This document shows, piece after piece, positions 1 through 64,000 of a DNA stretch of 64,000 nt (position 1 is its first letter; every line of letters begins with the position of its first letter). Source of the DNA: Mytilus edulis (lineage: Eukaryota); NCBI RefSeq assembly GCF_963676685.1, contig NC_092350.1, positions 6,696,001-6,760,000 on the forward strand. The letters are read 5' to 3'. A program made the translations under genes and the position numbers. A model generated the notes under the pieces. The model did no database searches, was not told the DNA's origin, and worked only from the letters and a program-made list of their open reading frames with translations.

Positions 1-1765
1 TTGTTTTTATTTGTTAATTAATTTCCAAATATGCCATTTCATTTTCTAAATCGCTTTCAGAGCAAAACTGATTTGTCGTTCAGTTTTTGTGTTTGAATTA
101 CTCGATCTTGGTATGGTAATTTTGGAATTGAAATTAACTGTAGAAACTTATGTAATTTGAATAAAAGAAAAAAAGAAAAAGTTCGATGAAATGATTGCTC
201 TGTAATTACGATTCAAAGTCAAAACGTCTCTGTTTTCCCAATTATATGAGTTATCTCTATCATTATCTTACGCTTGGTGATTTTGTCTTTTGATTGAAAT
301 TTATCTTATCTGAAATAGAATAACGTCATTAAGAAAATTACCCCCTTCACCAATTTCCTTGTAATATGAGACAACCATAGTCTGTATTCTTTCTTTTATT
401 GAAAATCGATTCGTATAATTGCATCTAATAAATGCTGATGTTCGTATTTAAGGTAGAGAACAAAGAACCTAATGATTTCGTATACAATAAATCATTGTTC
501 TTTTTTTAACTATCTGAAAATAGTAAGAGAAACGTCACTTTAATAGGTAAGAAATGATAAACTGACTATCTTCCCTAAACGTCAATTCGTAAAAAAGAAA
601 GTGTAAAAAATGTATGACAAAACACTATTTGCATGTTTGTGTCTCACCTATTTGTCCACCATATGCATTGTATGGCAATACTGTAATGATTGCAAACACA
701 TCCTCATTGAAAAATGTTGTCGTCATTCACATTGATTTCAGTCTTCGCTTAACCACAGTTGAGCTATATTTGCTTACATCTACTTAAACTTGTATATGAT
801 TGATATTATTTTTCTCATTGAAAATAATTTCAAATGTATTTATTGATAAGTTAATTTTGTTTAACGTTAAATAATTTCAAGACTTTACCTTCATCAGGAA
901 CGCTCAAAGCCATACATTTGAAATCCGAGGATGTATAAGTACTGAAACCGTTGAAGAGCTTTATGACAAAAATACCTAAAATGATAGCCAAAATCACCAG
1001 TGTGTTTGTTACCTTGATTTGTTTTCTTCGATTAAGAAATGTAACAATGTCTTAAATTTGGTTTGTTCACTGATCATTGTCAAAATCATAAAATTATAAA
1101 CGACTGCCATTCAAGTGAGCGATTTATCTAGTTATTAAACCAGGTTAAGTCCACCATTTCTACATATTAAAATGCATGTACAAAGTTAGGAATATGACAG
1201 TTGTTGTCCATTCGTTTGATGTGTTTGAACTATTGATTTTGCCATTTGATTAGGGACTTTCAGTTTTTAAATTTAACGTTGAGTTCAGTATTTTTTCTGA
1301 TTTTAATTACTAATTAATGTTATCATAATCCAAATGGTATATACTTACATGCTATTCATTTACAATACATTTTCAGTTTAAATAAAGGCAACAGTAGGAT
1401 ACTGCTGTTCGAAATTCATATATAAATTGAAAAGAAAACAAATCCGGGTTACAAACTAAAACTAAGAGAAACACATGAAATATAAGAGGAAAACCACGAC
1501 ACAACAGAAACACAACACTAAACTGCAACACACAGACACGAACTATATTTTAACAATGTCTTCATGTAGTTGCTTTGAAAAGTCGACGTACTCGTTTTGT
1601 TTGGGGTAAATGCAATAAACAAAGGGTTTGTTTTCTAGTAAGCTTTTGAATTAAAAAAAAGTACAGATTTATCAATTTTACATAACTTGAATTATTGTAT
1701 GCTGGTTCATATTCTGGACGCCAGTCTTTGCTCTTTTATTATATTATTCACTAACAAAAACAATT

Positions 1766-4605
1766 ATGAAGCTAAGAAATGGAAAAATATTAAATACTAA
1801 ACTTGTTCAAAGGGTATCTACACGTCTCAATCTTCAAAATCGGTTATCTAAAAATACTACCATCGCTAACATTTTTAACAATAAAAATCGTGGTTACCCT
1901 TCTATCGCTAAGTGTCATGCCACAAAATGACTTACATGTCCCCATCTTTCCACCAACAATACTATAAGGTCCACGTTTAATGGTCGCACATTTTCTTTGA
2001 ATTTTGAAACTGATATAACTTGAAAAACAAACAGTATTATTTATTTACTCACATGAAACAAACCGGGATGTGGTATTCAGTACGTAGGAGAAACTGGACG
2101 ATATTTATCTAAACGCACTCAAGAACATCTGTATCGTTTTAAAAGACCCAATACATTCAAAAGTATCATTTACCAACACCTAAAGAAGCACAACCATCCT
2201 TTTAAATATTTAGCAGTTCAACCTTTAGAAGTAGTAAATAAGCAGCCTGGTGAATCTCATTCAAAGTTTGTACGATCACGAAAAATAATTGAATTAAATT
2301 GGATTAAAAAATTACAGACAGTCTACCCTCTCGGTCTTAATGATAATATCATGGGAATTGGTAATATATCTAGAACCGATTCCGTTAACATTTTGGATAT
2401 AGTTTCTAAAACTGTTCGTAAAAACCGTTCTCACGGTCGTAGAACAAATCGTAATCAAAGAAAATTTCGGACCAATAATACCAATATTTCGGACCTAATT
2501 TCTATTTCAAAAAACAACGGCAGACATTATCTGTTAACAAAACTCTGTTCATTACCGGTTAATAAGTTAAATAAAATTTGGAGGATTGCAACACAATTTC
2601 ATATAGCAGTCCTAAGTATGATACTGTTCAAATTATTATGGCATATTGTTATTTTAAACTATTTTCCAAAATTGATCGCCCTGAAGATCATAAAAAACAT
2701 TTTATTAAAATAAATTATGTCAATAAAGGTTTTGATTTTGTAAATATTGCCGGTGTATTTAACGACCATTTTGTTAAAGAACACATTGCTGGATATTTTG
2801 ACAATACTGAGCTACCTCTTATTTGTTACATTTACAAGAAATCTACCCGGAAATTTGTGTTTAATTATAGTCAATTGTGTAAATGTTAATATCAGTATAA
2901 ATACACCTACTTCATGTAATTGTAGTACCTCCGAATATATTTATGGACCCCCCATGTTATAACAGGAGATCTTAACATCGTTAAAGTGAGAGTTAAAATC
3001 AAATCTCAGTAAAGGACCTTAATATCGTCCCCCGTCAACTATTAATTGGAATGAGTGTTCTAATAGCATCCACGACTCACTCCATACTTACTGTATGAAA
3101 TGGATAAAACGGGAAAAAGCTGACAAAAATCTTTGGACTCTTTTTTTAATTCATGAAGTGAAGATAGTTGATATACGTATTCAACATTTTACTATTAACA
3201 ATAACCACAATAAACCTAATTCTCGTATCAAACATAAACTAAATGAACTAGCCAAGAAATTTGTTTTTGTCTCGGCCGATAAAGCTGCTAATAATATTAT
3301 TATTGTTTGACGTAAATTTTACATTGAGGTTCTGAAAAAAAAAATCACCAATTCACCAACATTCCAACTGACTTCATTTTCAGAAAACGACATCTGTAAC
3401 AAACATAAACTTTTAGCTACTGCTTTACAAGCAGAGCAAAATACAATGAAAGTCCCAACTATGTATTGGCTTCCGAAGCTACACAAAAGACCTTACAAAT
3501 ATAGATTTATTTTGTCTTCAAGCCATTGTTCCACTACTAAATTGTCTATTCTTCTTACCAGCACACTTGGTACCATTAAAAACCTGATAATAAATTGTTC
3601 AAATAAGGCCTTCGAAAATAGTGGAATTAATTACTTTTGGAGTGTCAAGAACTCGTTGGAAGTACTTGATAAATTGCATGCTTATATTGGTGATTTTGAA
3701 TCTGTTCAAAGTTTTGATTTTTCTACCCTGTATACCACATTGTCTCACATTCTCATAAAGAAAAAATTCACACACCTAATTAAATGGGCATTTAAAAAAT
3801 CAGAATGTGAATATATATGTTCAAACTCTTTTAGGTCATTTTTTAGTAGCAATAAACAAAAAAACTATGTCAATTGGACATGCTTTGATACTATATATGC
3901 CCTTGAATTTTTACTAGATAACACTTTTGTTCGCTTTGGGGATTCCGTATATCGTCAGATTATCGGAATTCCAACGGGGACTAACTGTGCACCACTTATT
4001 GCGGACCTGTTTTTGTCTTGCTATGAGTTACAATTTATGACAAAAATAAGCAAAGACCCATCGAAACAACATCTAATCAACAAATTTAATAATACTTTTA
4101 GATATTGGGATGATATTTTGGCTCTCAATAATGACGACTTCAGTATGTATAATAAAGAAATTTATCCTGTTGAACTTATTTTAAATAAAGCTAATAATAA
4201 CAATGACCACTGCCCTTTCCTCGATCTTGATATCTATATCACTAACGGAAAGCTGAATACTAAAAGTTATGATAAAAGAGATGATTTTTCATTTCCTATC
4301 GTTAATTATCAATTTTTAGATGTTGACGTTCCCTTGTCACCATCTTACGGTGTTTATATATCTCAACTTGTACGATTCGCTCGTGTATGTAACAATGTTT
4401 TAGATTTTAACGAGAGAAATTTATGTATTACTGAAAAATTATTACACTAGGGTTTTCGATATCACAAACTAGTCAAAACATTTACTAAATTTTATCATCG
4501 GTATAAGGACATCATTCGTAAATATAGCTCAACATGCAGACTTCTTTTACGTTCAAGTATTTCACATCCAATTTTTTATGGAAATATTCTTTATAAAGCA
4601 CAAAG
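1766..4605 (+). mobile_element. Naiad-type Penelope-like retroelement (Zn-knuckle + GIY-YIG endonuclease upstream of RT), decayed copy, putative selenoprotein ORF
   Basis: The frame from ATG 1766 reads KCHATK*LTCPHL...DIT*KTNSIIYLLT*NKPGCGIQYVGETGRYLSKRTQEH...ELNWIKKLQTVYPLGLND (GIY-YIG). PLE RT motifs follow: ADKAANN, YWLPKLHK, SFDFSTLYT, QIIGIPTGTNCAPLIADL, RYWDD, CPFLDL, YGVYISQLVRFAR. Frameshifts at ~2580-3090 and TAG at 4448. The 3' end is replaced by another repeat at ~4605. Confidence 0.93.
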
Positions 4606-4731
4606 GACGCCTCCGGGTGCGGAAATTTTTCGCTACTTTGAAAACCTGTTAGTGACCTTCTGCTGTTGTTTTTTTCTATGGTCAGGTTGTTGTCTCTTTG
4701 GCACATTCCCCATTTCCATTCTCAATTTTAT
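4605..4731 (+). repeat. Interspersed repeat 3' end (GGACGCCTCCGGGTGCGG...CATTCCCCATTTCCATTCTCAATTTTAT family)
   Basis: A longer second copy lies at ~63470-63685. Confidence 0.8.
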
Positions 4732-7700
4732 CATGTGTTGATGCAATGTTAAAAATTAGTTTATATCATGCTACATTTCATGTTGAAATATGTTAATGAA
4801 AATACTGATTATGTAATTTTTTAATAATACAGCTTGTACAAATAGTCTGATGTTGCATGGTTCTACATCGAATACTCTCTTTTGTTTAAATAGAAAGAAA
4901 ACTATTTACTACACACTGAAAGATTATTGAGAAAAAAGCACTTATAATCTGTGTTCCGTATATGCAAAAACGTTTGGTCACCGTACAAGTTATTTTTTGC
5001 TACAAAACATCTACATAGACCGCATATTCCTGTATGAATAAGACTACGTATATGAATAATTCACCCTTATATCGCTAAGTTAAAAACTATGAAATAAACA
5101 AAGTTTGTGTTTACTCCAAACAAAGTCGTTGTAATAATGTAAATTTCATAGTTTTCATCATTAAGATGAAAAGTCTTACAAATAAATTACATTGCCGTCT
5201 CCAGTTTTGTACTTTTATCAATATTTAAATCGATGATTTACTGCTATTTCAGAATCTAAGACTGCGAAGTACCCTATTTGTCCTTAATCCATTATTATCA
5301 CATGGATAAACAGCGGTAAGAAAATGTAATCAGACTTCATAGTAATACAACATGGAAATATTGACCAATTCAAAGTTCAATGTGATATACAACCTGTCAT
5401 ATAGGGTATATACATGTATCTGCCAGTAAAGTTTTTTTTATTTTAGTTTACTTCTCTTTTTAGAAAGAAAGGGGTTTATGGGGTTCTTGATTGAATTTTG
5501 TCTATTTACCATTTAATTAAATTCATGATATAATACGAGATATGTCAATCGGCTACTACATCCAAAACGTAAGATTACAAAATACTGAACTCCAAGTAAA
5601 ATTCACAGCGGAAAGTCATTTGTTCAATGGAAATGTATGCCTCAAACACATCAAACGAATGATAAACAACTGTCTTACTTCTGACTTGGTACAGGTATTT
5701 CCTTATGTAAAAACTGGTGAGTTGAATGTTCAATCAGCTAATGTAGAAAGCTTTGCAGCAAAAACCATCTAAATGTCATCTTTAAATAGAGAGCCGTTAG
5801 ATATTTACTTTAACCTGAAACTCTGTCAAAACCGGTGGGAGTAATTATCATTTTAAAAAAAAGAGAATTATAATTTATTTCAGTTTTTGTCAATTTGAAT
5901 TACAAAAGGTACATGATTTGGTATGTTAAGTATAAGTTGCAGAGATGTCAAGTAAAAACCCTGATTATTTCATTAGTTATTGTCTGTTGTCCCCATCTTT
6001 CAATCTATTCTATTTCGATTGACAATGACTGTAAACCATTGAGGTGTTTAATCTGGAAATTCATTATAATTATCTGTATGATAGAACTTCAGTTAATGAC
6101 ACTCCGTCTAGTCCATTCATTAGTTGTTTGTCATTGACATCTGAAATGTAATACTGGTATACATGTACGATTAGTTTCGTATGAATAACTAGTTACAAAA
6201 CATTAGGTTTCCGTTAAAAGTTCATATGTGCTGATTTGCAAATAAACTCATCATAGATACCAGGACTAACTTTAGTATATACACCAGACGCGCGTTCTGT
6301 CAAATTGTTCCTTTTAAAATTGTTATACGATAAATTCTATATATAACTTTTGAACTATTTTCAATCTCGGTCTATTTCTGAAATTTATTTTTACATAATT
6401 TTGATGTTTTAATCCTATATGCTAACATTGCCTATAATTTTTTTTTAAATTGTTTGTATGCACATTAAACAACAAATCTATGTAACGTATCTATGTAAAG
6501 TATAAAATTTTCAAACGTCAAACACACAAATCAATGAATGTGTTTGTAGATAGATGTTTTTGTGTTCTGTAAAATTGTTCCTTTTAAAATTGTTATACGA
6601 TGATGACTGATGTACCCATATTTTGACTGTTTTATTTATTGTGTCTGTTTAGTCAAAGCATCAATATAAATATAACGGAATTTGATGAGACTGTCAATAA
6701 AGTGAGAGGGTTAGCGCTATAAAACCAGGTTTAATCCACCATTTTCTACACTTGAAAATACCTGTACCACGTCAGGAATATGACAGTTCTTGTCCATTCG
6801 TTTTTGATGCGTTTTGTTATTTGATTTTGCCATGTGATTATAGACTTTCCGAAGTGATTTTCCTCTAAGTTCAGTATTTTTGTGATTTTACTTTTTACGA
6901 GAATTGGAACATATACATGCATGTCGTCATGTGTTAAATAGACATTTCATAAAGGGCAACGAACTCGTAATGGTGTTCCTTTAATTTTCGAAGGGTAGAC
7001 ATTAACATTTAAAAATTAAAAGTACAAAAAACTAAATTACAAGGTAAACTCGAAAAGGGGAAGTGCATAAAGCTGACAGAATCAAACGCTATCAATCAAC
7101 GTATGAAATGACGAACAATTAATCGCCATATTCCTGACTTAGTAATTGCTGGATTATAACTGGTTTTATAGCTAGTTTAATTTTCCACTTGGTATTGCAG
7201 TTGTTTAAAGTTCCGATATATTTACTAAATGAGGTATGAAATCCAAACATACATAATAGATTGTTTCACACTAGTCGTTTTGGGACCCTTTATAGCTAGT
7301 TGTTCGGTGTAAGCTAAGGCTCCGTGTTAAAGCCGTACTTTGACCAAAAATGTTCACGATTTTTACATTGTGACTGATGCCACATCTTCCTATATATAAT
7401 GTGACAATAATAGGGACACAACAATCAAACGTGTGTACCCATACAACACGGATATACAATACAACTGACAAAAAATTCAAATAAACAAGCAAATTAATCA
7501 AAAACAAACAACAAAAAATTGTAGGTCTTGGCAAATTGCAATGAACTTTTTGAGAAAATAAACGAGTCGTCCTGTGAAAAAACCAAGGCTTGTTAATTTT
7601 TTGCTAAGAACCAATGACGTATTACTAAGTCTTAGTAGCAGCTGAAGGCTATTTAATACCGTTCGAGGACGGAAAAATTCTAAAATTGTGATCTTTTTGT

Positions 7701-8224: not shown

Positions 8225-9231
8225 GCCAATGAAAACTTGATTTTTATCTCTGTAGAAGTCGCTCCTCGCTATCCTACTGCCTGTCGATACATTGATTTTT
8301 GGCATTGCACAAGTCATGTCTTCTCTGACTGTTCATGACGTTAAAATGCTAATTCCCTGGGATGTGTTTTAGTTGATTTTAGTCTCTGATGCATGATTTT
8401 TTTATTATTAATTGGTTTTGGCTTTTAACTAGCTGTCAGTAACTGCGAGTACTCTCAAATCGTATTTTCCTGTTAATTTGACCTGTTGATACTGTTTATA
8501 ATGCCTTTTTGTTATTTTATATTAATATGGAACTTGTCTATATACCAGCCTTGACTATTTGGAATATCTTCTAATTTTCACTTACTACATTTGTATAAAC
8601 TTCGAGATTTACCTGTATTATTAAAACCGGTTTTTTTTTTCAAATGTGATAATTTTTGTAGGGTTAAATGTTTTGCAGTGGTGTCTTGACATGGTTTTGT
8701 TTGGACTTATTTGTTTGCTTTTTGGCCATGAATGTTTATCCCTAATATTTTATTAACTGTGCATTTACGTTCAGATATCGCAGATAAAATTTATTCGTTC
8801 ATAGCGTATAAATTTACGTTTTTTGATTGAGTTAAGCCTGCCAGTTGATATTTTATCGTATGTTTTTCTATGTTGTGATGTTATGCTATTGTTTCAGAAA
8901 AAGGGAGAAGGTTTGGTACCATTAAAACGTTTAATCCCGCTGCAAATATTTGCACCTGTCCTAAGTCAGGAATCTGATGTACAGTAATTGTCGTTTGTTT
9001 ATGTAATTTATACGTGTTTCTCGTTTTTTTTATATAGATTAGACGGTTGGTTTTCTCGTTTGAATGGTTTTACACTAGTAATTTTGGGGCCCTTTATAGC
9101 TTGTTGTTCGGTGTGAGCCAAGGCTCCGTGTTGAAGACCGTACATTGACCTATAATGGTTTACTTTTTTTAAATTGTTATTTGGATGGAGAGTTGTCTCA
9201 TTGGCACTCACACCACATCTTCCTATATCTA
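8225..9231 (+). mobile_element. 5'-truncated Penelope-type 3' fragment (3'UTR/pLTR) carrying the SECIS
   Basis: Absent from the paralogous duplicated unit near 31.0 kb. It ends in ...GGCACTCACACCACATCTTCCTATATCTAT, as do shorter copies at 10260-10537, 43838-44121, 7270-7397 and 39095-39209. A shared 3' end with variable 5' ends is a retrotransposition pattern. Assignment to the Naiad family is inference. Confidence 0.6.
8313..8397 (+). promoter_or_regulatory. SECIS element (eukaryotic type II selenocysteine insertion sequence)
   Basis: Folded by hand: AUGA 8335-8338; 10-bp helix II (8340-8349 with 8364-8373, several G-U pairs); unpaired AA 8351-8352; apical mini-stem UCC/GGA; 3' GA 8375-8376; helix I GACUG/UAGUC; outer UCAUG/CAUGA stem. 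Confidence 0.75.
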
Positions 9232-10259
9232 TTGTTCGTCGGTTATGCTTTTTTTGTCCTTCATGTTTAACAACATATGAAAAATGATATTCCATAATAA
9301 GTTTGACGATGGACAGCACAGGGGATTATTTCTTTAAGACGGGTTTTAATTTTTCATGCTGTATGTTGGTGCAAAAGGTTGAAAAACAAAGGTTTACCCA
9401 GATGTATATCTTTGAAAAATTCTCTTGAGTTCTTAAATGTCAATATATGGGTAATCCTAGGCGAGTAAACAGTGTCACAGTCTTTTAGCAATCGACCTTT
9501 CACTACATTTTGATTTTATAGCGGATTCCTATGTAGAACATGCAGATGAGCCGGCAATGTTACTGCTGTTTGTCGAAGCTAGATTTGGTATTCAATACAA
9601 ACAAGATCATCTATTATATTATTTGTTCATTGAATATTCAATTCGGCCATGAAAAAAAATGTAGTTTTGTGGAACTAATCTTTATCAAAGATAACGCTTT
9701 TGTACATATGATTACCCGCGTGTCCTTTTTTCAGAATCCCTTGACAAGAAACTCTTATCAAACAGCTTTCGTGCAAACAGCAATTGTTTATTCATGAAAA
9801 ATATGAAAGGTAAAACTAATTTCGTATCAAAATAATTATTCGACCTTCAGATCTCATTTTGTTTCCTTTCTATTCAATCCAAAAACACAAATATACCCTT
9901 CAGATGTAACAATTGCTACCTTTACGGCATTACATCTTCTTGATAAGAATTGAAGAGTGAAGGAGAAGCATGCTGTTATATTTTGTCAGTTTGGTATCAT
10001 ACCACTGGGTTTTGAAATGTTATAATGATTTCCATTGACGACAATCAGCTGCTAATGTCGTATGTTGTTTAATCGTTGACATATTTCGTCGGAAAGGCTT
10101 CAGGTAAAGTATTAAGTAAACTTTTAATTAATCAGATGAAATCTCTCTCTAATTAGATCTCTAGTAAAAAGTGTGGAAGTGTTGTTTTAATGTATAAAGT
10201 AAAATAACACAAACATCGAGCTCAACGGAAAATTAGAAAATAAAATTATCTTATTAAAA

Positions 10260-10537
10260 GGAATCTGATGTCCAGTAGTTGTCGTTTGTTTATGTAATTT
10301 ATACGTGTTTCTCGTTTCTCGTTTTTTTATATAGATTAGACCGTTGGTTTTCCCGTTTGAATGGTTTTACACTAGTAATTTTGAAGCCCTTAATAGCTTG
10401 TTGTTCGGTGTGAGCCAAGGCTCCGTGTTGAAGGCCGTACATTGACCTATAATGGTTTACTTTTTTTTTTTTTTTTTATTGTTATTTGAACGGAGAATTG
10501 TCGCATTGGCACTCACACCACATCTTCCTATATTTAT
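10260..10537 (+). repeat. Short copy of the same 3'-end repeat family
   Basis: Near-identical to 8969-9231. The empty site is visible in the paralog at ~31910 (TTATTAAAA...AAAATCAAAAGCTC). Confidence 0.85.
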
Positions 10538-18300: not shown

Positions 18301-20400
18301 TTTATCTTATTAATGTAATATGAATTTATGTCTGTTAAAAATTATTGTTTCTTTTCGAAAAAATATATATCATCATGATCATGTAAAGTTGTAAAGGGTT
18401 TTATTCTTCAAAAAATAAAATTAATATAGAAAATATAGTATAGTGATAAAGAATATTTTATAAAAAATAGAGATATAATATGTGAAGTACATATATTTAT
18501 AATTGAAATAAAGGTTCATACCAACAGTCTATTGATAATAAAAACATAACTGTAGCAGTAGGTAAGTTAATATTGTTAATATTTTGCTGATCTAACATCC
18601 AAGGAAAGTGTTAGGTAGTTTGCAACTGCACATATTGATTCTGGTTATGTCAAGAGGGTTTTAAATTGTTCTTCGTCACTTAGTTCTTGTAAGTCAATGG
18701 TAAGTTTCTGATTGGCAATGTTAAACATAGTTTGTCTTTCTTGGTCATACGCTGGACATTTAATTACAAAATGAATCTCATCTTCTATTGCTTGTTTGGT
18801 ACAAAGTTTGCAAATCCTTCTTTCTACTTGTAGTTGCCTATATCTTCCTTTCTCAATTTCTATAGGAAAAGTTCCACTTCTCAGTTTTGAAAGCACAGCA
18901 CGTTTTTTTGTTGATAATGTTTTCAGAAGTGTTGGTTTTTGGCAATAATCAGATTTTATTTTTACATATGTTCTTAATTTAGGCATTCCTGCACATTCCA
19001 CTTTCCAGTTTTCTGCTGCTATAGTTGTTAATCTATGTTTAACTAGACCAAGAAAGTTTTTGTTACTCATACCGAGTAAACTACTCATGTTGTAGTGGTT
19101 TAGAAGATCACATTTACCCAATATTGTTTTAATTTCTAAAGCCCAACTATTTCTCATGTTCTTTTCTTTTTCACTTAGATAGGCAATCTTTGGTAGTCTA
19201 TTGCTTGACATGTTAATTATTCTTGCCCATAGTCTGATCATGTTCAAATGGTGTCTGAGTTGAACTTCCATCCAGCATGTTTCTCCTGTTAAATATGGAA
19301 TGGGTGCTCTTTTACCAACGCCTAGAAATGTCCTTGCAGCTCTAGATTGCAGTTTATCAGCAAAGTCATATTTTTTGAACCCCCAAATTTCTGAGGCATA
19401 ATCTGCCACCGGGACAACTGTATTATAATATAGTTTTTCGTAAACTGGAAAACTTAGTCCTTTTATACTGAAATGTTTTGAAATCATAGCACCAAGAGCT
19501 CTACCGCCAGCTTCATGTAGTAGCTTAACTCCTTAAGTAAATTCAACTGTTTCACATATTTCAAATCCAAGATACCTGTAGGACTTACACAAATCAATTG
19601 TTTGATGGCCTATATTGAACGTTTTGTCTGTTGGTTTCATACTTGCTTTGCGACAGTGTATTATTTTTGTTTTGTCTATGTTCATTTTCAACTGCCACTT
19701 TTCAGACCAGCTGTGTAAGGTATCAAGCATATTCTGCATATCATTTTCTGTTTCTGAAAGTATAATAATATCATCAGCATACATGAGCACACTTAATTTT
19801 GAGTTATCACACATTTGTATTCCCAAGTTTAAATTATTAATGTCAAGTGCCAAGTCATTGATAAAGATAGCAAACAATACGGGTGCTAAGTTGTCCCCTT
19901 GCCTTACTCCTCTTTCCACTGCAAACCAATCAGTAGCCATATTTTCAACTTTTACACAACTGTGAAGGTTTTTATACATTGTTTTTATGACTTTGTATAT
20001 TTTTCCAGTTATACCATTGCTCAAGATCTTTGTAAAAAGTAGCTCATGGTTCACAGAGTCAAATGCCTTAGCAAAATCTATGAAACATAGAAATGTTGAC
20101 AACTTTTCATGTTTTCTTCTTCGTAAGATTGATTATAAAGTATATATATGATCTATGCATGATCTTAGCTTTCGGAAGCCGTTTTGTTCCTCACAGAGTA
20201 ACTCGTTTGAGTCTAGATATTCTGTTATCCTTTTACTAAGAATAGAGTTAAAGAGTTTTGCTACTGTTGACATTAAACTATTTGACCTATGATTAAGGGG
20301 CACTCTATTGTCTTTTCCTTTTTAAGTATAGGATGGATAATACTGTAATCCCATTTAGTTGGCAAAATGTTTCGATCAAAGCACAACTGGAATAGTTTCA
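15340..20400 (-). mobile_element. 5'-truncated non-LTR retrotransposon (LINE; RTE-X/CR1-Zenon-like) with long 3'UTR and internal tandem duplication
   Basis: RT motifs EEQNGFR, FIDFAKAFDSV, GVRQGDNLAP, YADD, YRYLG. C-terminal LRSGTFPIEIEKGRY...CKLC...EDEIHFVIKCPAY. Premature TAA stops at 19533 and 18645. AATAAA plus an (AATCT)n tail at ~15340-15365. Confidence 0.92.
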
Positions 20401-21402
20401 ATAATAATTTATATATATGGCGGTGCGCAAGTATAAAAAAAAAACTGTTACAGTGAGAACGACTGAATTCGAATACAGCGAAGTTTCACAAGCATCATTA
20501 CTTATTGTTTAATTGTTGGTTTTTTTTATATGTTTTTGCGGCCATGAATCTTTACATATTAATCGTTTATAATCTGTACATATGCCGATTGTGTCATATC
20601 AGTTTTATTGACATATTGACTAAAGTATATTTGCATGGTTAGTAATGAATTTTGGCAGCAATTACTTAAAATGTCGACGTACTTGTTAATGTTTTGTGCA
20701 TGCAATTCACAAAGGATTGTTTCTCGTAAGATTCTGAATTAAAAAGGGATAGCATGTTTTCATGCATTGTTAAAAATGTACATGTGTTTGGAAACATTTC
20801 AACGAAAATACTGATTATTGATGTTCTTGATGATATGGCTAGTCCGAAATAATTATCAATTTTGAATACAGTCATATATACCTCAAACTCTCTTTTGGTA
20901 GAATAGATACAACACTACTTACTTTATACAATTTGAAAGTTTTTTGAGAAAAAAAGGCTAATAATCTGCGTTCCGCAAATTTTGTAATGCATTTTATGTT
21001 TTTGGTCACCGTACTTGTTTTTATTTTGCTACATAATATCTGCATTGGCTGTATATTCCTGTATGAATAAGACTATGTATTTGCATAATCACCCTTATAT
21101 CGCTAAGTTAAAACAATGAAATAAACAAGTGTTTATTTCAAACACAGTCGTCGTAATTATGTAAATTGCATAGTTTTCATCATTTAGATAAAAAAATCTT
21201 ACAAATAAATTGCATTGCTGTCTCAAGTTTTGTATTTATCATGAATATTTAAATCGATGATTTACTGCTATTTTTAAATCTCAGACTGCGAAGTACCCTG
21301 ATTGTCCTTAATCCATAACTATCAAATGGATGAACAGAAAATGTTATTAGACTTCATAGTTATGCGAAATGAAAATAGTGACCAATTCAAAGACTGATGT
21401 GA

Positions 21403-26179: not shown

Positions 26180-27623
26180 TAATTTGATGCGTGTTTTATT
26201 TTTATTTTACTATCATGAAAAATGACGATTTACTGGTTGCTGCCTGTGCAATTTTCGTGAAAAACTTATGTTTTGGTTATAGTGTTGAATAATAACCATA
26301 TTCCCAATGTGCTTGTATAAAGCTTACGTATTCTGTAAATTTTACTACATGTATTTACTATTTTAATGGTTTTTTTAACAGTAAAAATACAGCGCATTTT
26401 TAACTATATGAATGTAATTTATGGTTAATTAAGAACTATGTCGTTGTCACATTGCATTTCTGACATAAAAAGGGGCACTTTACAGATTAAAACAACTGTT
26501 AAATCAATTGCTAGTGATGTTTCCAATTGCTTATAGATTTTGTATAGAATGAAAGTATATTCAGCATTGATAGTGTTGTCATTTAAGGACAATTTTCATG
26601 TTCTGTACAATATTCATTATTCAATATGATGATGTTTTTCAAAAGTTCAATTCAAATCATGTTTTTGACGTTAAATGATACATGTAGAGTAGTATATCGA
26701 AAAGTAAATTAACAAAAATACCAAACTTAAAGGAAAACTTCAAACGGAAACCCCATTATAAATATATTAACTTATAGTATCAATCATAAATTTTTGATTT
26801 TTTATATTTCACATCCTTAAGAGTGAGTTGGAGAGATGTCAAGTAAAAAGCCTGATTATTTCATTAGTTATTGTCTGTTGTCCCCATCTTTCAATCTATT
26901 CTTTTTCGATTGACAATGACTGTAAACCATTGAGGTGTTTAATCTGGAAATTCATTATAATTATCTGTATGATAGAACGTCAGTTAATGATACACCGTCT
27001 ATTCCATTCATTTGTTGTTTGTTATTGACATCTGAAATTTAATATCGATCAACATGTACGATTAGTTACGTATGAATAAATAGTTACAGTTCATTAGATT
27101 TCCGTTCAAAATTCAAATATGCTGATATGAAAGAATTGATCCTTAGCACATTATTATGTTTTGCGAATTATTCAACGTACATACTTGAACTGTCTTTAGT
27201 ACTTGGTTGAACGTATTGTATGATAAACCCATATGTTAAAGCATTAAATGCATCTATTTAAAAGTATATAGGAAAGTATTATACCACTTTCCATGTTCAC
27301 AATGTTTTTTCTGCCTTTTAAGTGTGGAAGGTATTAAAATGTCATTGTAAAAATTAATCATTTGCAATCTGTAAACGTAGGAAATATTAGGATATTAAAA
27401 GTACAAAAATGCAAAACAAAAATACTAAATTCAAAAGCAAATTGGAAAAAGTCCACAATACTGACAAATGAAACGCTAGCAATTAACGCAACAGATAAAG
27501 AACAATTGCCATATTCTTGACGTTGAAAATGGTGGATTGAAGGTGGTTTTATAGCTTGCTGAATCTAAAGAAATGACATCTTTAATGACCTGACAATAAT
27601 ATTGTAATTATATCCCTTCTTAA

Positions 27624-30600: not shown

Positions 30601-30769
30601 CTAAAAATCTTTAAAAATCAGAATTTTGAGCTTTTCACCTGAAAAATCGGGACGGGCGATCTTCGATATTTTTCATTAAATGATTGGGTACTCCTCCCTG
30701 AACAAAATGATGTATCATATTAGTACAATATTACTAAGACAAAAATCCAGGTTTCATGCAAACCTTACC
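27624..30769. mobile_element. TTAA-targeting TIR element (Kolobok-like), non-autonomous, with nested repeats
   Basis: TIR GGTAAGGTTTGC...GCAAACCTTACC flanked by TTAA (27620-27623, 30770-30773). No transposase ORF seen. Confidence 0.7.
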
Positions 30770-32204
30770 TTAATTAGTCTGTTTAAAGGTTTTGTTAGCT
30801 TTTGATGTGAATGCCGACATTCTTTATTTGATCTTCTCTTTTTTTAACATGAGTCCGAAGTAACTCAAATTTATATGACAATAGGAAAACAGGGACAAGC
30901 CAACAGGGAGAGATACACATTTGTTTTTGGAAATGCTGAGAACCTGCAGAACACGTCTTCTTCAAATTTTAAATAAATATGTTGTCAATGAGAAACTCAT
31001 TGTTCTTCGTTGTAGCATATGCTTATTTAGGGATTCATTTTAACCCAAAAAAAAGGTAGAATCAATAACAAGTATGATGAAGGATATTATTGGGGATTAT
31101 TTCTTTAAGACGGGATTTTAATTTTTCATGCTGGACGGTGGTAGAGAGGGTGGCAAAACAAAAGTTTTGATAGTTTTAATTTCAGAAATATGACTCAGAC
31201 GTTTTTCAATTTTAAAGAAGTTGTTTTGCGTTCTAAAATGTAAATATATGGTCTATGCAACTATGCGAATAAACAGTGTCACTGTCTTTTAGCAATCAAC
31301 CTTTCACTGCAGACAATTTTTTTTATAATTATTTTGTAGAACAATTTACTGTTATTTGTCGAAGCCATGTTAAATAATCAATATAAACAAGATACGCTAG
31401 TATATTTTTTGTCAATTTTGGCATGAAGAACATGTAGTTTAACAAGAGCTCATCTCTATCAAAGATAACGCTTTTGTACATATGATTATCCGCGTGTTCC
31501 GTTATTCCCAATCGTTTGACAAGAAGCTCTTAACAAACAGTGTTCTTGTAAACAGCAATACATCTTCAGATATAACCATTGCTACCTTTACGGCATTAAA
31601 TCTTCTTTATAAGAATTGAAGAGTGAAGGAGAAACATGCTGTTATTTTTGTTAGTTTGGTATCATACCAATGGGTTTTTAAATTTTATACTGATTTCCAA
31701 TAACGGCAATCAGTTGCTTATGTCGTATGTTGTTTAATCGTTAACATATTTCGTCGGAAATGCTCCAGGTAAAATACAAAGTAAACTTTTAATTAATCAG
31801 AAGAAATCTCTCGCTAATTAGATCTCTAGTGAAAAGTGTTGAAGTGTTGAATAAAGTAAAACAACACGAACATCGACCTCAAAGGAAAATTGAAAGATTG
31901 AAGTCTCTTATTAAAATGCAAAATCAAAAGCTCAAAGACATAAAACGCATGGAAATGAATAAACAACTGTCATATTCCCGATTAGGCAAAAGCCTTTTCT
32001 TATGTACAGAATTTTGGATAATACCTGGTCGTCATTAGTTCGTGAGAGGCACAGCAGGTATGCCAGAATCAAGATTTACAAAACCAATCCAGAAGTTGAA
32101 GAAATACATACAAATATTCAGAATAGTAATTGGGATATTTCATAATTGATATGGTTCTTATTGTATTTCAAAATCATCACTGGATATTCTTGAAAATGAA
32201 TAAC

Positions 32205-37700: not shown

Positions 37701-39246
37701 AATAAAGTCAATAGAAAAATTACCCGCTCCACCAATTTCCTTATAATAAGAGTCCACAATATTCTGTTTTCTTTCTTTAATTGAAAATCGATTCGTATAA
37801 TTGCATCGAATAAAGGCTGATGTTCGTATTGAAGGTACAGAACAAAAAACCAAATAATATAGTATACAATGAATCATTGTTCTTTTTGTAATCATCTTAA
37901 AATAGTAAGATAAACGTCACTCTCCCGATAAAGCTTTAAGCGGAAAGGAATGATAAACTTACTTGTTTTTACCTACCCGGCAAATCGAAAAAAAAAAGTC
38001 TAATAAATGTATGACAAATCACTTTTGCATATTTATGTTTCATCTATATGTCCAACATTTGCATTTTATTGCAAATTTGCATGGATTGCAGACACAGCCT
38101 CATTTCAAAATGGTGTCATCATTCATTTTGATTTAAGTCTTTACTCGACCATAGTTGCATCTACTTAGTCTTGTATCTGATTGATATGTTTCTCATTGAA
38201 AATAATATCAAATCTTTTTGTTGTTAAGTGAGTACTTTGCCACGTTATATTTTACCGTACGATATGTGATTAAATGTCCACATTCGAGACAACAACTATA
38301 ACACAACAGTTGAATCTGAATCAATCATAATTGATTTACATATATCAAACAGTTCAGAACTCTCAGGTTTGTTCAAACTATACGTACTTAAAAATGGGTC
38401 TGCTTCTTATACAACATCTGTTCAGACAGTGTCCTGACGAAAAACTACTACAATCGACAGAAGATGCCATTTTAGGTTACTATTACGGATGTGTTGACTT
38501 ATACAACGTGACTGTGTCTAAGCTTACAATCAACATGTTTGGTCGGTCTTTGATCAATACTCATGTATTCAAGGGTAGTCGTCTCCCGATCGTAACATTT
38601 ATTTGATGTGTGATGTTTTTTATGAATAATAATTGTCGTAGTAAACGATTGCTATATCACTATACTCTCTTATGTGGCTCTTTTGACAATGTCTTCAAAA
38701 AGAGGGACAAAAGATACCAGAGGGTCATTCCAACTCATAGATCGTAAGTTCCTAGAATTCAATAGAATGCTGTTAAACATATATAGTTTGTCATAATATT
38801 ACATGTCTGAATAATATGCAACGATAAATCTTAGGGGGGCGATGAATCATATAATTATGATTCAGTATACTTCAAAGTATAAAATAAAATAAGTAAGTCT
38901 AAAACATCACAAAAAAAATCATGAACTAATACCCTTTATCTGTTAGCTATCAAACGATTTTTATCTTGACATGTGGTTGTCACACTGTAAAAGTAATCTT
39001 GCTCGTTATGCAAATTATCACGAATCAATACGCTGGTGAATATTTGCAAAGGAGGAATAAATTTCTTAAAACTGGAAGAGTCTGTACTATCGCATGAGCC
39101 AAGGCTCGGTGTTGAAGACCGTAGTTTGACCTATAATGGTTACTTTTACAAATTGGGACTTGGATTGAAATTTGTCTCATTGACTCTGATACCATATCCT
39201 ATTATATCTTTGAGTTACTGGATACAAGTGACAGTAGATACTCGTT

Positions 39247-42094: not shown

Positions 42095-43145
42095 ACCAGC
42101 GGACAGTCAAACTCATAAATCGAAAATAAACTGACAACGCCAAGGAAAAAATGAAAAACAAACCAGACAAACAATAGTACACATGACACAACATAGAAAT
42201 CTAAAGAATAAGCAACACAAACCCCACCAAAAACTAGGAGTGTTCTCAGCTGCTCTGGAAGGGTAAGCCAGATCCTGCTCCACATGTGGCACCCGTCGTG
42301 TTGCTCATGTTATAACAAATTCGATAAATAGTCTTATTCGGTAGGTCACATTTATGAAAGGTGAGGGGATTGTAGTCACGACGTAAGGAACATATCCGAT
42401 TTCATCTGTAAAACGATTATTCAATAACGGTCAACCATCTCGTAATGGCGTCCGTAAAAGTTACGAAGGGATGACTTCAACTTCACCATTTGGAACCCTT
42501 GGTTTAATAGCGTCCTTGTGAGAAGCAATTCTATATCATGAAAATAATGATAGGAAATACAAGCACGGGAATATCGTATCAATTGGGAGATATTTACCCC
42601 GTATGCAAGTGCTCTTAGAATGTTGCTACTTAGAAATGGAAAGTCACCATTGAAAAGCTGAAATCATCTATTTGTCGTAAAGTTTTGTTTTCAACCGACC
42701 CTCATTGTCAATTTTTAGATATAAGTCAAGATACGAGGCCGACTTAACTGTAACTGTTGCATCCTTTATCTCTAGTTCAAAGGGATAGATGCGTTCAACA
42801 TAGTCACAAAATTTTGAATTATTTAGTGAGAGAACATCATCTACAATATATAGCGGAAATTCAAGTTAAAGGATATTGCCAAATTTTTATCTTTCTTTCT
42901 AAGAAGTTCCTGTATGAAGTCAGTCTCATAATAATAAGGAAACAAGTCGACAAGAAGAGGAGCACAATTGGTCCCCATTGGAATGCCGACAGCCTATTGA
43001 AAAAGCGTCCTTTGAACGTAAAAAATATGTTGTCAATCAAGAAAACAAGCATCTTGATAATGTCATTTTCAGAGATATTTTTGTTTGAATCAGAGTGATC
43101 ATTTACACAGTAGGATTTATCTCTCCCTCAGATACTTGTATCTAT
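42095..43145 (-). mobile_element. Penelope/Naiad RT fragment with 3' tail
   Basis: Frameshifted FLIDNIFFTF, GIPMGTNCAPLLVDLF, SYLDL and AYGVNISQLIR motifs. Confidence 0.85.
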
Positions 43146-43837
43146 GCTGGCCAATCGGATAAATAAAAATACATTGGTATGATTATCCGTCAAAAACCGT
43201 ATTTAATGTGCTTCGTTAATTTGAATCGATCTGTAAAATGGATTATATTAAATAAGCATTTTGTATATAGATATGCATTTAAAAATTGAATTAGAAAAAA
43301 ATGTTCTTTGTCTGTTTATTATTGTATCAACGTAGGAATTTGCTTTTGTTGCATTTCAGTGTTTTGGGGTAACCGATGTTTGCCTCTTATAGTTGATGTG
43401 CTTCCCTAGGTTTTGGTTTGTTCCCCGGATTTGTTTGTGACTATTAAACAGTGGTAAACTAATTTTGGCTTTATTAGTCTTTGTGTTATATTAGACAAAA
43501 TGTTAATTCATCAGTGTTGACAGATCATTTAACAATTGGTTATCCTACACAAAGCTATTGGAAAGCACATTGTAAGTATGATGATTAAAATATGAATCAG
43601 CGTGACAGTCAATTAGAAAATTAGACATATTTTTCTTTATATATTTGATACATGTTCCAAGTGTGCATCAATTTAATACATCCTCTATTAACTGCTTATA
43701 CATGTCATACAATTATTGACAAATGTTTGTTTTTATGAAACCAGACGTCTCACCAGATGTATGACATTTTGTAGGTTTTTCTTTCCGAAGATATCACCAG
43801 CTTAGTACTCAGCACTTCTGTATTGACATGTTTTGCA

Positions 43838-44121
43838 TCTGTCCTAAGTCAGTTATCTGATGTACAGTAGTTGTCGTTTGTTTATGTAATTAATACGTGT
43901 TTCTCGTTTCTCGTTTTTTTTATATAGATTAGACCGTTGGTTTTCCTGTTTGAATGCTTTTACACTAGTAATTTTGGAGCCCTTTATAGCTTGATGTTCG
44001 GTGTGAGCCAAGGCTTCGTGTTGAAGGCCGAACATTGACCTATAATGGTTTACTTTTTTTTAAATTGTTATCGGATGGCGAGTTGTCTCATTGGCACTGA
44101 CACCACATCTTCCTACATCTA
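43838..44121 (+). repeat. Short copy of the same 3'-end repeat family
   Basis: Aligns with 8957-9231. Confidence 0.85.
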
Positions 44122-62925: not shown

Positions 62926-64000
62926 CTGTAAAAATAAGACACCTTACTCATGATATGTGCTTTAACAAAGTTATTATATCATTGAAAAACTATCTTCCAC
63001 CTTTCAAAAATATATCAAAAAATGGGAACCATTTTTAACAGGTAATTTAACGATACCGGAAAGATAACTCATATTCAATTGAAAAATAAATGTGTAACAC
63101 AACTGGATGCATCCTATAGATATCATATATCTGTATGTAAGAATTAAATATGTGCTACTAAGTGATGATAACAGGAGTTAAAATACATGTATTGTTTTAT
63201 ATGTTTTCAAGTCTTTGATAGAAATACGTATGTAAAAAACAATGTATTATTCTTATACATTAGTAGAGAAAATAATAACAAAATATGTCACTATATTTCT
63301 TTTGTATCAGTACATGTATAAATATAATAACTATGTTGCACCAATAATGAAAATAATCTATTAATACCAATATAATGTTAAATGAAATAATCTAATGATT
63401 TTTTCTTTGTTTTTATTTGCTTCTTTGGTTGTTTTTTTTTTGGGGGGGAGGGTAAAAAAAAGTTATGATTTTTAATTTTAGTTTCTTGTGTATAATTCGG
63501 AGTTTAGTATGACGTCCATTATTATTGCACTAGTATACAATTTCAAGGAGCCAGCTGAAGGGCGCCTCCGGGTGCGGGAGTTTCTCGTTACATTGAAGAC
63601 CTATTGGTGGCCCTCGGCTGTTGTCTGCTCTATAATCGGGTTGTTGTCGCTTTGACACATTCCCCATTTCCTTTCTCAATTTTATTTTAACATTAATGTC
63701 ATTCTTCTTTGATTAAAAAAAATGCATATAAGCATTGAATGAGATGGAGGAATTCAAAACAAAAGACTTATTTACAAAAACATATGTGAACCAATGCAAT
63801 TAAAATGTTTTAACACATGTTTGTTTTCCAAAATGACAATTTATCTTTACAATATCAATGAAAGAAAAATGAGAGCAGTTGATTTTCACATGGGTGTTTA
63901 TAAAAATAAGAGCATTTGGTATGCGTCGGATTTATGGAACAACACATTATATCGGATGAAGTGTGATTAAACAGTTTGATCCTCATTCTCAAGGAATTCG

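What the first reader, a model, noticed from the sequence alone, without database searches (positions are those of the whole stretch)
1766..3446. Retrotransposon ORF with four in-frame UGA codons at conserved Cys positions: a selenoprotein-encoding Naiad element
Seen in sequence: the frame from ATG 1766 to 2713 is interrupted only by TGA, at 1928 (C-HATK-U-LT-C, Zn knuckle), 2021 (DIT-U-KTNSIIY) and 2054 (YLLT-U-NKPG-C-GIQYVGET). A fourth TGA at 3308 (DKAANNIIIV-U-RKFY) is the only interruption between the 3095 ORF and the RT ORF at 3446, in the same frame. All four fall where PLE proteins have Cys, while the decay stops I noted are TAA/TAG at non-Cys sites. The ORF track therefore misses the whole endonuclease. 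Established: Naiads have N-terminal GIY-YIG, and selenoprotein Naiads were reported from some spiders and clams (Craig et al. 2021, from memory). Inference: this family is Sec-recoded, so its mobility would depend on host selenium supply and Sec machinery. Sec as a metal ligand in a nuclease Zn site is unusual. I cannot tell whether it is already described in this lineage.
Basis: partly seen in the sequence, partly recalled or inferred. Interest (0 to 1): 0.92.

Follow-up and report, generated by a model that had tools for sequence, protein, structure and literature searches.

The report
Selenocysteine-coding Naiad retrotransposon, dead mussel copy
This is a broken copy, in a mussel (Mytilus) genome, of a Penelope-like "Naiad" retrotransposon whose intact copies use four UGA codons for selenocysteine in place of conserved cysteines; such elements were known from clams and spiders, so this adds mussels rather than a new principle.

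Summary
The frame from ATG 1766 carries TGA at 1928, 2021, 2054 and 3308.

Three full-length copies of the same family from independent marine metagenomes (L001-L003) have a 1002-codon frame. Its only interruptions are those four TGAs, and it ends in TAA.
- All four TGAs fall on near-invariant Cys columns in 32 all-Cys Naiad-like proteins.
- Each segment between TGAs is under strong purifying selection (dN/dS 0.03-0.11, dS 0.28).
- A canonical SECIS hairpin (AUGA, AAA, GA) sits 51 nt after the TAA. Across families, 15 of 18 pairs show compensatory changes.
- Related all-Cys elements have no SECIS.

The window copy itself is dead. It is 5'-truncated by about 262 nt and has seven private indels and a private TAG. 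A 657-nt deletion removed the last 48 codons and the SECIS.

The host is Mytilus. Craig et al. 2021 described Sec-Naiads only in two clams and two spiders. This family combines the three clam positions with a spider-type position (second Cys of CX4CxxC).

The parts
1659..4731 (+). Degraded copy of a Sec-type Naiad retrotransposon. It is 5'-truncated by about 262 nt and carries an internal 657-nt deletion. The intact unit is about 4.02 kb.
   Evidence: It is 95.7% identical to L001 401-3363, plus the terminal tail. The insertion is bounded by a paralogous unfilled site at 20666-20975. The junctions were read.
1766..1768 (+). Start codon of the single Naiad ORF
   Evidence: ATG is conserved in L001, L002 and L003. 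The 1002-codon frame starts here.
1913..1939 (+). CX4-U-xx-C Zn-finger-like motif (Cys50, Sec55, Cys58)
   Evidence: Codons 50 and 58 are TGT and codon 55 is TGA.
1928..1930 (+). TGA, codon 55: second Cys position of the CX2-5CxxC motif (putative Sec)
   Evidence: TGA in the window and in L001-L003. Cys in 22 of 23 aligned homologues.
2021..2023 (+). TGA, codon 86: the Cys just before the GIY motif (putative Sec)
   Evidence: TGA in the window, L001-L003 and L009/L010. Cys in 27 of 27 homologues.
2054..2056 (+). TGA, codon 97: first Cys of the CCHH motif, between GIY and YVG (putative Sec)
   Evidence: TGA in the window, L001-L003 and L009/L010. Cys in 28 of 28 homologues.
2036..2350 (+). GIY-YIG endonuclease core (IIY ... 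YVGET ... conserved R/H/E/N region)
   Evidence: Alignment with all-Cys Naiad-like proteins. Pfam GIY-YIG scores 26.1 bits, above its 22.6 cutoff, on the homologous region of the relative L013.
2577..3183 (+). Stretch holding seven private indels relative to the intact copies, at about 2577, 2883, 2951, 2987, 3125, 3154 and 3183. The first four indels (at 2577, 2883, 2951, 2987) shift the frame off the true reading between about 2577 and 2990, and the offsetting pair at 3125/3154 shifts it again between about 3125 and 3154.
   Evidence: Indel list from the MAFFT alignment of the window with L001-L003.
2915..2923 (+). CxC linker motif (C-N-C), diagnostic for Naiad/Chlamys
   Evidence: L004 and L009/L010 carry TGA at its first Cys.
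3308..3310 (+). TGA, codon 522: the Cys eight residues after the DKA motif (putative Sec)
   Evidence: TGA in the window, L001-L003 and L009/L010. Cys in 32 of 32 homologues.
3446..4450 (+). Reverse-transcriptase part of the ORF, listed as a separate 334-aa ORF only because of the upstream TGA and the TAG at 4448
   Evidence: It is 96% identical to P0001, a cluster of 133 sequences.
4448..4450 (+). Private TAG: an in-register decay stop at a Gln position
   Evidence: Sense codon in L001-L003 and Q in all protein homologues.
4603..4610 (+). Junction of a 657-nt internal deletion (equivalent to L001 3364-4020) with AAGG microhomology. It removed the last 48 codons, the TAA stop and the SECIS.
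4603..4731 (+). Terminal 3' tail of the element, about 130 nt
   Evidence: It matches L001 4-135 and 4021-4093, and L002 3554-3680, which lie at the unit ends of tandem or circularly assembled copies.
63464..63688 (+). Second, heavily 5'-truncated copy of the same family. It holds only the last 225 nt and has no SECIS.
   Evidence: 88% identical to L002 3460-3683.

Best explanation
Window 1659-4731 is a dead copy of a roughly 4.0-kb Naiad element, a Penelope-like retrotransposon with an N-terminal GIY-YIG endonuclease fused to a reverse transcriptase. It lies in a Mytilus genome.

In intact copies of the family, one 1002-codon ORF is translated through four UGA codons as selenocysteine. A single SECIS hairpin in the 3' UTR, 51 nt after the TAA stop, directs this.

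The four Sec residues replace conserved cysteines:
- Sec55 is the second Cys of the CX4CxxC knuckle.
- Sec86 is the Cys just before GIY.
- Sec97 is the first Cys of the CCHH motif inside the nuclease.
- Sec522 is the Cys eight residues after the DKA motif at the start of the RT.

What is shown: the fixed TGAs, the Cys/Sec pairing, purifying selection across every inter-TGA segment, a SECIS with covariation, and co-occurrence of the SECIS with TGA-bearing families.

What is inferred: that Sec is actually inserted, that Sec55, Sec86 and Sec97 act as metal ligands in two Zn sites of the endonuclease, and that expression therefore depends on host Sec machinery and selenium.

The window copy cannot make the protein. 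It is 5'-truncated, frameshifted, has a TAG, and has lost its C-terminus and its SECIS.
For: - TGA at 1928, 2021, 2054 and 3308.
- The same four TGAs are the only interruptions of a 1002-codon frame ending in TAA in L001, L002 and L003. These come from separate metagenomes. L001 and L002 differ at 7% of bases.
- The four sites align with Cys in 22/23, 27/27, 28/28 and 32/32 all-Cys homologues.
- dN/dS between L001 and L002 is 0.10 overall at dS 0.275. It is 0.026 upstream of the third TGA, 0.10 for codons 98-521 and 0.11 for codons 523-1002.
- Rfam SECIS_1 hits of 31-32 bits (E 0.007-0.017) lie at the same place in L001, L002, L003 and L008, with 28 bits in L004.
- The related TGA-bearing family L009/L010 has a SECIS of 42-43 bits, above Rfam's cutoff of 35, in every unit.
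- The seven-sequence SECIS alignment keeps AUGA, AAA and GA invariant, and 15 of 18 pairs show compensatory changes.
- The all-Cys relatives L013, L014, L015, L020 and L021 have no SECIS.
- In the RT tree, one clade with 100% SH-aLRT support holds all verified Sec copies and all ORFs that break right after codon 522. All 24 uninterrupted all-Cys proteins lie outside it.
- No member of the 133-sequence P0001 cluster that was read extends upstream of Met568.
- Published precedent exists: Craig et al. 2021, PMC8557442.
- Decay of the window copy is shown.
Against: - There is no experimental evidence of Sec insertion.
- The Mytilus-family SECIS scores 31-32 bits, just under Rfam's gathering score of 35. 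Its fold is not more stable than shuffles (z = -1.5).
- The full-length copies are metagenome contigs that probably collapse many genomic copies. They show the majority state, not individual loci, and their Mytilus origin is inferred only from 91-96% identity to the window copy.
- One SECIS would have to serve four UGAs up to 2.9 kb away. That is unusual outside SelenoP.
Confidence: 0.85

Rival explanations
1. The TGAs are ordinary inactivating mutations. They were inherited from a dead master copy or arose by Cys-codon decay, and the family is simply a set of pseudogenes.
For: The window copy is clearly decayed. TGT/TGC to TGA is a single-base change. L007, a degraded single copy, has a TGA at another Cys that could be decay.
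Against: - The four TGAs are the only stops in 1002 codons in three copies from two subfamilies separated by dS 0.28.
- dN/dS is 0.03-0.11 both upstream and downstream of every TGA.
- All four sit on invariant Cys columns.
- A SECIS is conserved with covariation.
- A distant family at 45% identity shares three of the sites.
Confidence: 0.03
2. The UGAs are read through, but not as Sec. For example, Cys or Trp could be inserted by near-cognate or suppressor tRNAs, or read-through could be leaky, with the hairpin downstream serving another role such as RT template recognition.
For: - The 3' UTR is more conserved than synonymous sites (6% against dS 0.28), so it has functions beyond the SECIS.
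- One relative has Trp at codon 522 (P0096).
- From general knowledge, SECIS-dependent Cys insertion at UGA is known under selenium deficiency.
Against: - The hairpin has every canonical SECIS feature: the AUGA/GA quartet and apical AAA. It is found by Rfam's SECIS model, above its cutoff in the sister family.
- It is absent from all-Cys relatives.
- UGA pairs specifically with Cys, which is the signature of Sec.
Confidence: 0.08
3. The UGAs act as real stops, so that the element makes separate short peptides, or makes the RT alone from an internal start at Met568.
For: Gene callers list the 435-aa RT ORF from Met568 in many copies.
Against: - The TGAs cut through the GIY-YIG core and cut off the DKA motif from the rest of the RT.
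- Homologues are single uninterrupted proteins of 900-1100 aa.
- The 45 codons between the TGA at 522 and Met568 stay in frame and conserved, and are included in the low dN/dS.
Confidence: 0.04

Closest known systems
Selenoprotein-encoding Naiads of clams (Naiad_Mmer in Mercenaria mercenaria, Naiad_Scon in Sinonovacula constricta; Craig et al. 2021, PMC8557442)
   Same: - The architecture matches: N-terminal GIY-YIG, a CxC linker, then RT.
- UGA sits at the Cys before GIY-YIG, at the first Cys of CCHH and at the Cys eight residues after DKA (one search compared).
- There is a single SECIS just after the stop.
- The host is a bivalve.
   Different: - The host is a mussel (Mytilus, Pteriomorphia), which that paper does not name as having Sec-Naiads.
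- A fourth UGA lies at the second Cys of the CX2-5CxxC motif, a finger reported as recoded only in spiders.
- All four UGAs are at Cys sites, whereas Naiad_Scon's fourth is at a non-Cys RT6 site.
- The SECIS is 51 nt after the stop, against 1-21 nt reported there.
- Sequence relatedness to those two consensus sequences could not be tested, because the supplements are not held.
Selenoprotein-encoding Naiads of spiders (Naiad_Sdum, Naiad_Smim in Stegodyphus; same paper)
   Same: UGA lies within the CX2-5CxxC knuckle. Naiad_Sdum recodes both the first and second Cys, and here the second is recoded. UGA also lies at the pre-GIY Cys and at DKA+8.
   Different: The first Cys of that knuckle is TGT here, and the CCHH first Cys is also recoded. 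The host phylum differs. The paper infers an independent origin in spiders.
Ordinary all-Cys Naiads (e.g. the extended Penelope-2_CGi of oysters; here L013 and P0151)
   Same: The domain order and motifs match, at 37-47% identity over EN plus RT. L013 matches Pfam GIY-YIG above its cutoff.
   Different: They have no in-frame UGA and no SECIS. They fall outside the Sec or 'break-at-522' clade.
Selenoprotein P (multi-Sec host selenoprotein, especially Sec-rich in bivalves)
   Same: Several UGAs are decoded as Sec in one mRNA, which requires processive recoding.
   Different: The proteins are unrelated. From general knowledge, SelenoP typically uses two SECIS elements and Sec-rich tails. Here one SECIS serves four structurally placed Sec residues in a transposon enzyme.

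Membership tests
Naiad clade of Penelope-like elements | GIY-YIG endonuclease N-terminal to the reverse transcriptase in a single ORF | tested here: met
   The motif order in the intact copies is IIY...YVGET at codons 91-110 and the RT from about codon 510. One tblastn alignment spans EN plus RT of the all-Cys relative L013, and L013 matches Pfam GIY-YIG at 26.1 bits against a 22.6 cutoff. The Sec family's own pieces give no Pfam hit because the TGAs split the domain.
Naiad clade of Penelope-like elements | CX2-5CxxC and CCHH Zn-finger-like motifs in the endonuclease (these distinguish Naiad from Chlamys) | tested here: met
   C50-x4-U55-x2-C58, and U97-x4-C102 followed by His residues. Cys is replaced by TGA at positions 55 and 97.
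Naiad clade of Penelope-like elements | Linker with a CxC motif, then GxKF/Y and DKA motifs before the RT core | tested here: met
   C-N-C at codons 385-387, G-P-K-Y at codons 420-423 and DKA at codons 512-514 in L001. The motif definitions are from PMC8557442.
Naiad clade of Penelope-like elements | Tandem or pseudo-LTR organisation and frequent 5' truncation | tested here: met
   The ends of the L001 and L002 contigs repeat, giving units of 4017 and 4031 nt. L002 runs into the next unit's 5' end. L009/L010 are head-to-tail arrays. Both window copies are 5'-truncated.
Naiad clade of Penelope-like elements | No canonical hammerhead ribozyme | tested here: met
   No hammerhead family appears among the Rfam matches up to E=1 in L001-L008 or in the window at gathering threshold.
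Naiad clade of Penelope-like elements | Insertion-in-fingers domain in the RT; placement within the published Naiad phylogeny | not tested
The IFD was not examined.
Eukaryotic selenoprotein gene | In-frame UGA aligned with Cys in homologues, with a conserved coding frame on both sides | tested here: met
Eukaryotic selenoprotein gene | SECIS element in the 3' UTR (AUGA/GA kink-turn core, unpaired AA in the apical region) | tested here: met
   This is met in the intact copies. Rfam SECIS_1 gives 31-32 bits in L001-L003 and L008 (below the cutoff of 35) and 42-43 bits in the sister family L009/L010. Invariant core motifs and covariation are shown. It is not met in the window copy, where the region is deleted.
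Eukaryotic selenoprotein gene | Selenium actually incorporated; host Sec machinery present | not testable with these tools
   This needs 75Se labelling, mass spectrometry or a reporter assay. Bivalve Sec machinery and Sec-rich SelenoP are taken from the literature cited in PMC8557442.
Reverse transcriptase (Pfam RVT_1) | Match to the RVT_1 profile | tested here: inconclusive
   There is no hit for the window or L001 RT pieces. The relatives L013 and P0037 score 19.6 and 16 bits, below the cutoff of 29.6. The RT motifs (FDFSTLYT, GIPMGTNCAPL, RYLDD) are visible in the translation. My understanding is that weak RVT_1 scores are usual for PLE RTs.

The most novel reading that the evidence does not exclude
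Sec-Naiads may not be rare curiosities of two clams and two spiders. They may form a large and abundant bivalve-wide clade, here extended to mussels.

In this reading, Sec at the DKA+8 site and in the nuclease Zn sites is ancestral, and individual Cys positions keep switching between Cys and Sec while the SECIS is retained.
- The second knuckle Cys is UGA in Mytilus.
- The first CxC Cys is UGA in L004 and L009/L010.
- DKA+8 has reverted to Cys in L004 and P0002.
- DKA+8 is Trp in P0096.

That would make this the most dynamic Cys/Sec exchange system known, and a mobile source of SECIS elements for host genes.
Probability: 0.45. Interest if true: 0.7.

Novelty: new member of a known kind. Interest (0 to 1): 0.5.

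Why it matters
- **Range.** Selenoprotein-encoding transposons have so far been reported in only four species. Finding one in Mytilus, an abundant and experimentally tractable genus with very many Naiad copies, widens the known range.
- **Recoding patterns.** This family combines the clam and spider recoding patterns. That bears on whether Sec use arose once or repeatedly.
- **Abundance.** Protein-database ORF boundaries and the RT tree suggest that a whole clade of bivalve Naiads is broken exactly at the DKA+8 codon. If those breaks are UGAs, Sec-recoded transposons are common.
- **Annotation.** Such elements would be systematically mis-annotated as pseudogenes or split ORFs. The ORF list here missed the endonuclease for this reason.
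- **SECIS dispersal.** 5'-truncated copies scatter 3' ends through the genome, and a weak SECIS-like relic lies at 8319-8391. This is a possible route for host genes to acquire a SECIS.
- **This locus.** The copy in the window has no function.

Tried and rejected
Genomic DNA for the 133-member P0001 cluster and for the other protein hits could not be fetched, so no genome-wide copy census was made.
- **Viral-contig scan** found nothing.
- **Rfam on the window** found nothing at gathering threshold. No SECIS appeared in 4300-5300 at E up to 10. At first this looked like evidence against recoding, but the 657-nt deletion explains it.
- **Pfam on the window pieces and the L001 pieces** gave no GIY-YIG or RVT_1 hit. 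Domain identity therefore rests on alignment with relatives.
- **The 3' tail (4603-4731)** was first suspected to be an unrelated SINE that had truncated the element. This was rejected because the same tail ends the unit in L001, L002, L003 and L008.
- **A single-sequence fold of the SECIS region** is not significantly more stable than shuffles (z = -1.5). The support comes from covariation, not from energy.
- **The paper's supplements** are not held, so no comparison with Naiad_Mmer or Naiad_Scon was possible.
- **Structure prediction was not run.** The tool returns no coordinates, so it could not show which Cys/Sec residues share a metal site.
The read-through of L001 was done only inside scripts, with X at each TGA.
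Full report
**1. The observation**

The peptide contexts are exactly as quoted. The 334-aa RT ORF (3446-4450) and the 71-aa ORF (3095-3310) in the ORF list are in the same frame, separated only by the TGA at 3308.

Two details need correcting. First, after about 2577 the copy is frameshifted, so the apparently open stretch to 2713 and its TAA are out of register. Second, frame 1 also contains a TGA at 2987 inside the shifted region, and this is not a Sec codon.

**2. What the window copy is**

A self-comparison shows that 1575-1657 and 4785-4958 are the two halves of a sequence that is contiguous at 20666-20975. The element is therefore an insertion of about 3.1 kb, at 1659-4731.

The RT ORF has thousands of relatives in public protein collections. 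The closest, P0001, is 96% identical, 435 aa long and represents 133 sequences. Its alignment shows two things:
- The window copy lacks the last 48 codons.
- The TAG at 4448 sits where every relative has Gln.

Instead, a metagenome scan with P0001 returned three full-length copies (L001, L002, L003) and several partial ones. Against these the window copy shows the following damage:
- It is 5'-truncated by about 262 nt.
- It has seven private indels between 2577 and 3183.
- It has the private TAG at 4448.
- It has a 657-nt deletion, with AAGG microhomology at the junction. The deletion joins codon 954 directly to the terminal 130-nt tail.

That tail (4603-4731) is the true 3' end of the family. 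The same tail ends the unit in L001, L002, L003 and L008. The L001 and L002 contigs are circularly permuted, with units of 4017 and 4031 nt. This is the tandem or pseudo-LTR arrangement typical of Penelope-like elements. A second copy at 63464-63688 retains only the last 225 nt.

**3. Are the TGAs fixed?**

In L001, L002 and L003 the frame from the homologous ATG runs for 1002 codons to a TAA. Its only interruptions are TGA at codons 55, 86, 97 and 522, the same four as in the window.

L002 and L003 are 99.9% identical to each other but come from different samples. L001 differs from them at 7% of bases. Because metagenome assemblies collapse repeats, these contigs approximate the majority state of the family.

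Between L001 and L002, dS is 0.275 and dN/dS is 0.10. Every segment delimited by TGAs is constrained: 0.026 for codons 1-96, 0.10 for 98-521 and 0.11 for 523-1002. The whole frame has therefore been translated through all four TGAs during the divergence of the subfamilies.

**4. Cys/Sec pairing**

The L001 frame, with X at each TGA, was aligned with 32 uninterrupted Naiad-like proteins of 830-1113 aa from the representative search. The four X positions fall on Cys columns in 22/23, 27/27, 28/28 and 32/32 of the non-gap rows.

In the terms of Craig et al. 2021 (PMC8557442):
- Codon 55 is the second Cys of the CX2-5CxxC knuckle.
- Codon 86 is the Cys preceding GIY-YIG.
- Codon 97 is the first Cys of the CCHH motif.
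- Codon 522 is the Cys eight residues after DKA.

**5. SECIS**

The window copy has none, because the region is deleted.

The intact copies carry a match to Rfam SECIS_1 at L001 3562-3626, 51 nt after the TAA. It is also present in L002, L003 and L008 at 31-32 bits (E 0.007-0.017), just under the curated cutoff of 35, and in L004 at 28 bits.

A related family, recovered as contamination in bacterial MAGs (L009/L010, 45% protein identity, head-to-tail arrays), has a SECIS of 42-43 bits in every unit. L012 has one at 39 bits.

Aligning seven of these SECIS elements gives invariant AUGA, AAA and GA motifs in the canonical places. Of the 18 pairs, 15 show compensatory changes.

The uninterrupted all-Cys relatives (L013 with 1.1 kb of 3' sequence, and L014, L015, L020, L021) have no SECIS, by either Rfam or a model built from the alignment. 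The SECIS therefore travels with the TGAs.

**6. Host and literature**

A neighbouring BEL/Pao-type ORF (48091-50304) is 97% identical to a Mytilus edulis protein, and its next-best named hits are other Mytilus species. The window therefore comes from a Mytilus mussel.

Craig et al. 2021 is the only paper in the held library that describes Sec-encoding transposons. It reports four families, from the clams S. constricta and M. mercenaria and from two Stegodyphus spiders. It mentions M. galloprovincialis Naiads only for copy number and for a 5-aa insert in the knuckle.

The family here combines the three clam positions with a position in the knuckle that was reported as recoded only in spiders.

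**7. Wider pattern (leads, only partly verified)**

- **L009/L010** share TGA at codons 86, 97 and 522. They add one at the first Cys of the CxC motif and one at a non-Cys site.
- **L004**, 80% identical to L001 in protein, keeps the SECIS but has TGT at codon 522. It has a TGA at the first CxC Cys, although that lies at the very edge of the contig.
- **L007**, a degraded copy, has TGA at another Cys.
- **ORF boundaries.** Of 148 RT ORFs from the protein searches, 92 begin at positions equivalent to codons 523-570, many at 524-531. Only six read through codon 522 as Cys and one as Trp.
- **RT tree.** A clade with 100% SH-aLRT support contains all verified Sec copies and all of these 'break' ORFs, with the few Cys or Trp forms nested inside. 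All 24 uninterrupted all-Cys proteins lie outside it.

There is a caveat. The word-index search sees only proteins of 0.55-1.75 times the query length, so it is biased towards split ORFs. The representative search had no such length limit, however, and its best full-length uninterrupted hit was only 47% identical.

**8. Mechanism**

The evidence shows a single-ORF EN-RT protein whose mRNA needs SECIS-directed decoding of four UGAs.

The following are inferred:
- Sec55 and Sec86, together with Cys50 and Cys58, and Sec97 with Cys102 and two His, form the two Zn-finger-like sites of the nuclease. Sec522 sits at a conserved Cys at the RT N-terminus.
- Because three UGAs lie within the first 97 codons, failure of Sec insertion would abort translation early. 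This would tie transposon expression to the host's Sec capacity.

None of this applies to the window copy, which is a relic.

**9. Verdict**

The specific locus is non-functional. The phenomenon is already published, so this is a new member (mussels, with a new combination of Sec sites) of a known kind.

Noticed in passing
window 8319-8391 (+), with 8898-8971: A SECIS-like hairpin (AUGA ... UGAU) was found by the family-built covariance model at 25.4 bits (E about 0.001-0.003), but not by Rfam SECIS_1. About 550 nt downstream, a 74-nt stretch matches the 3' UTR of Naiad copies L006 and L001-L003. It is probably the relic of the 3' part of a diverged Sec-type Naiad.
   Followed up: partly
window 63464-63688 (+): A 225-nt copy of just the 3' end of the same Naiad family, heavily 5'-truncated and 88% identical to L002 3460-3683.
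   Followed up: yes
window 42424-43008 (-); also 27578-27623, 30769-30824 and 42925-42989 (-): A degenerate Naiad/PLE RT fragment (31% identity to L001, 8 stops), and short fragments matching the part of the ORF 3' end that is deleted from the main copy. These are older, scattered Naiad debris.
   Followed up: no
window 1575-1657 plus 4785-4958, against 20666-20975: The flanks of the Naiad copy are the two halves of another repeat that is uninterrupted at 20666-20975 (70-77% identity). This serves as an empty-site control. No clear target-site duplication was seen.
   Followed up: partly
window 48091-50304 (+): An intact 737-aa ORF of a BEL/Pao-type LTR retrotransposon (gag-protease; Pfam PF03564 and PF05585 on its homologues). 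It is 97% identical to a Mytilus edulis protein, and this identifies the host genus.
   Followed up: partly
window 18645-20102 (-): Two adjacent ORFs of 280 and 189 aa with non-LTR (LINE-type) reverse-transcriptase motifs, probably one frameshifted LINE.
   Followed up: no
window 8949-9232, with copies at 43832-44122, 10259-10537, 7260-7371, 39095-39209 and others: A short interspersed repeat of about 280 nt, present at least seven times in the window at 79-91% identity. It is unrelated to the Naiad tail.
   Followed up: no
L009 and L010 (contigs CBDDTI010000653.1 and CBDDTI010000448.1, labelled as a bacterial MAG): These 'bacterial' contigs are head-to-tail arrays of a eukaryotic Naiad with five in-frame TGAs and a SECIS above Rfam's cutoff. 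They are therefore animal DNA binned into a MAG. The TGA of the SECIS core is itself in frame with the ORF. Nearly identical RT ORFs (P0083, P0091, P0101) stand for 116, 477 and 769 sequences.
   Followed up: partly
L001 3511-4017 against L002 3041-3560: The 3' UTR differs by only 6% between subfamilies whose synonymous sites differ by dS 0.28. The UTR is therefore under constraint well beyond the 65-nt SECIS, possibly for RT template recognition.
   Followed up: no
P0002 cluster; P0096: Within one 90%-identity cluster, some ORFs read through codon 522 as Cys (535-543 aa) while others start only at Met568 (435 aa). This hints at a Cys/Sec polymorphism among close relatives. One relative has Trp (one base from UGA) at that site.
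   Followed up: no
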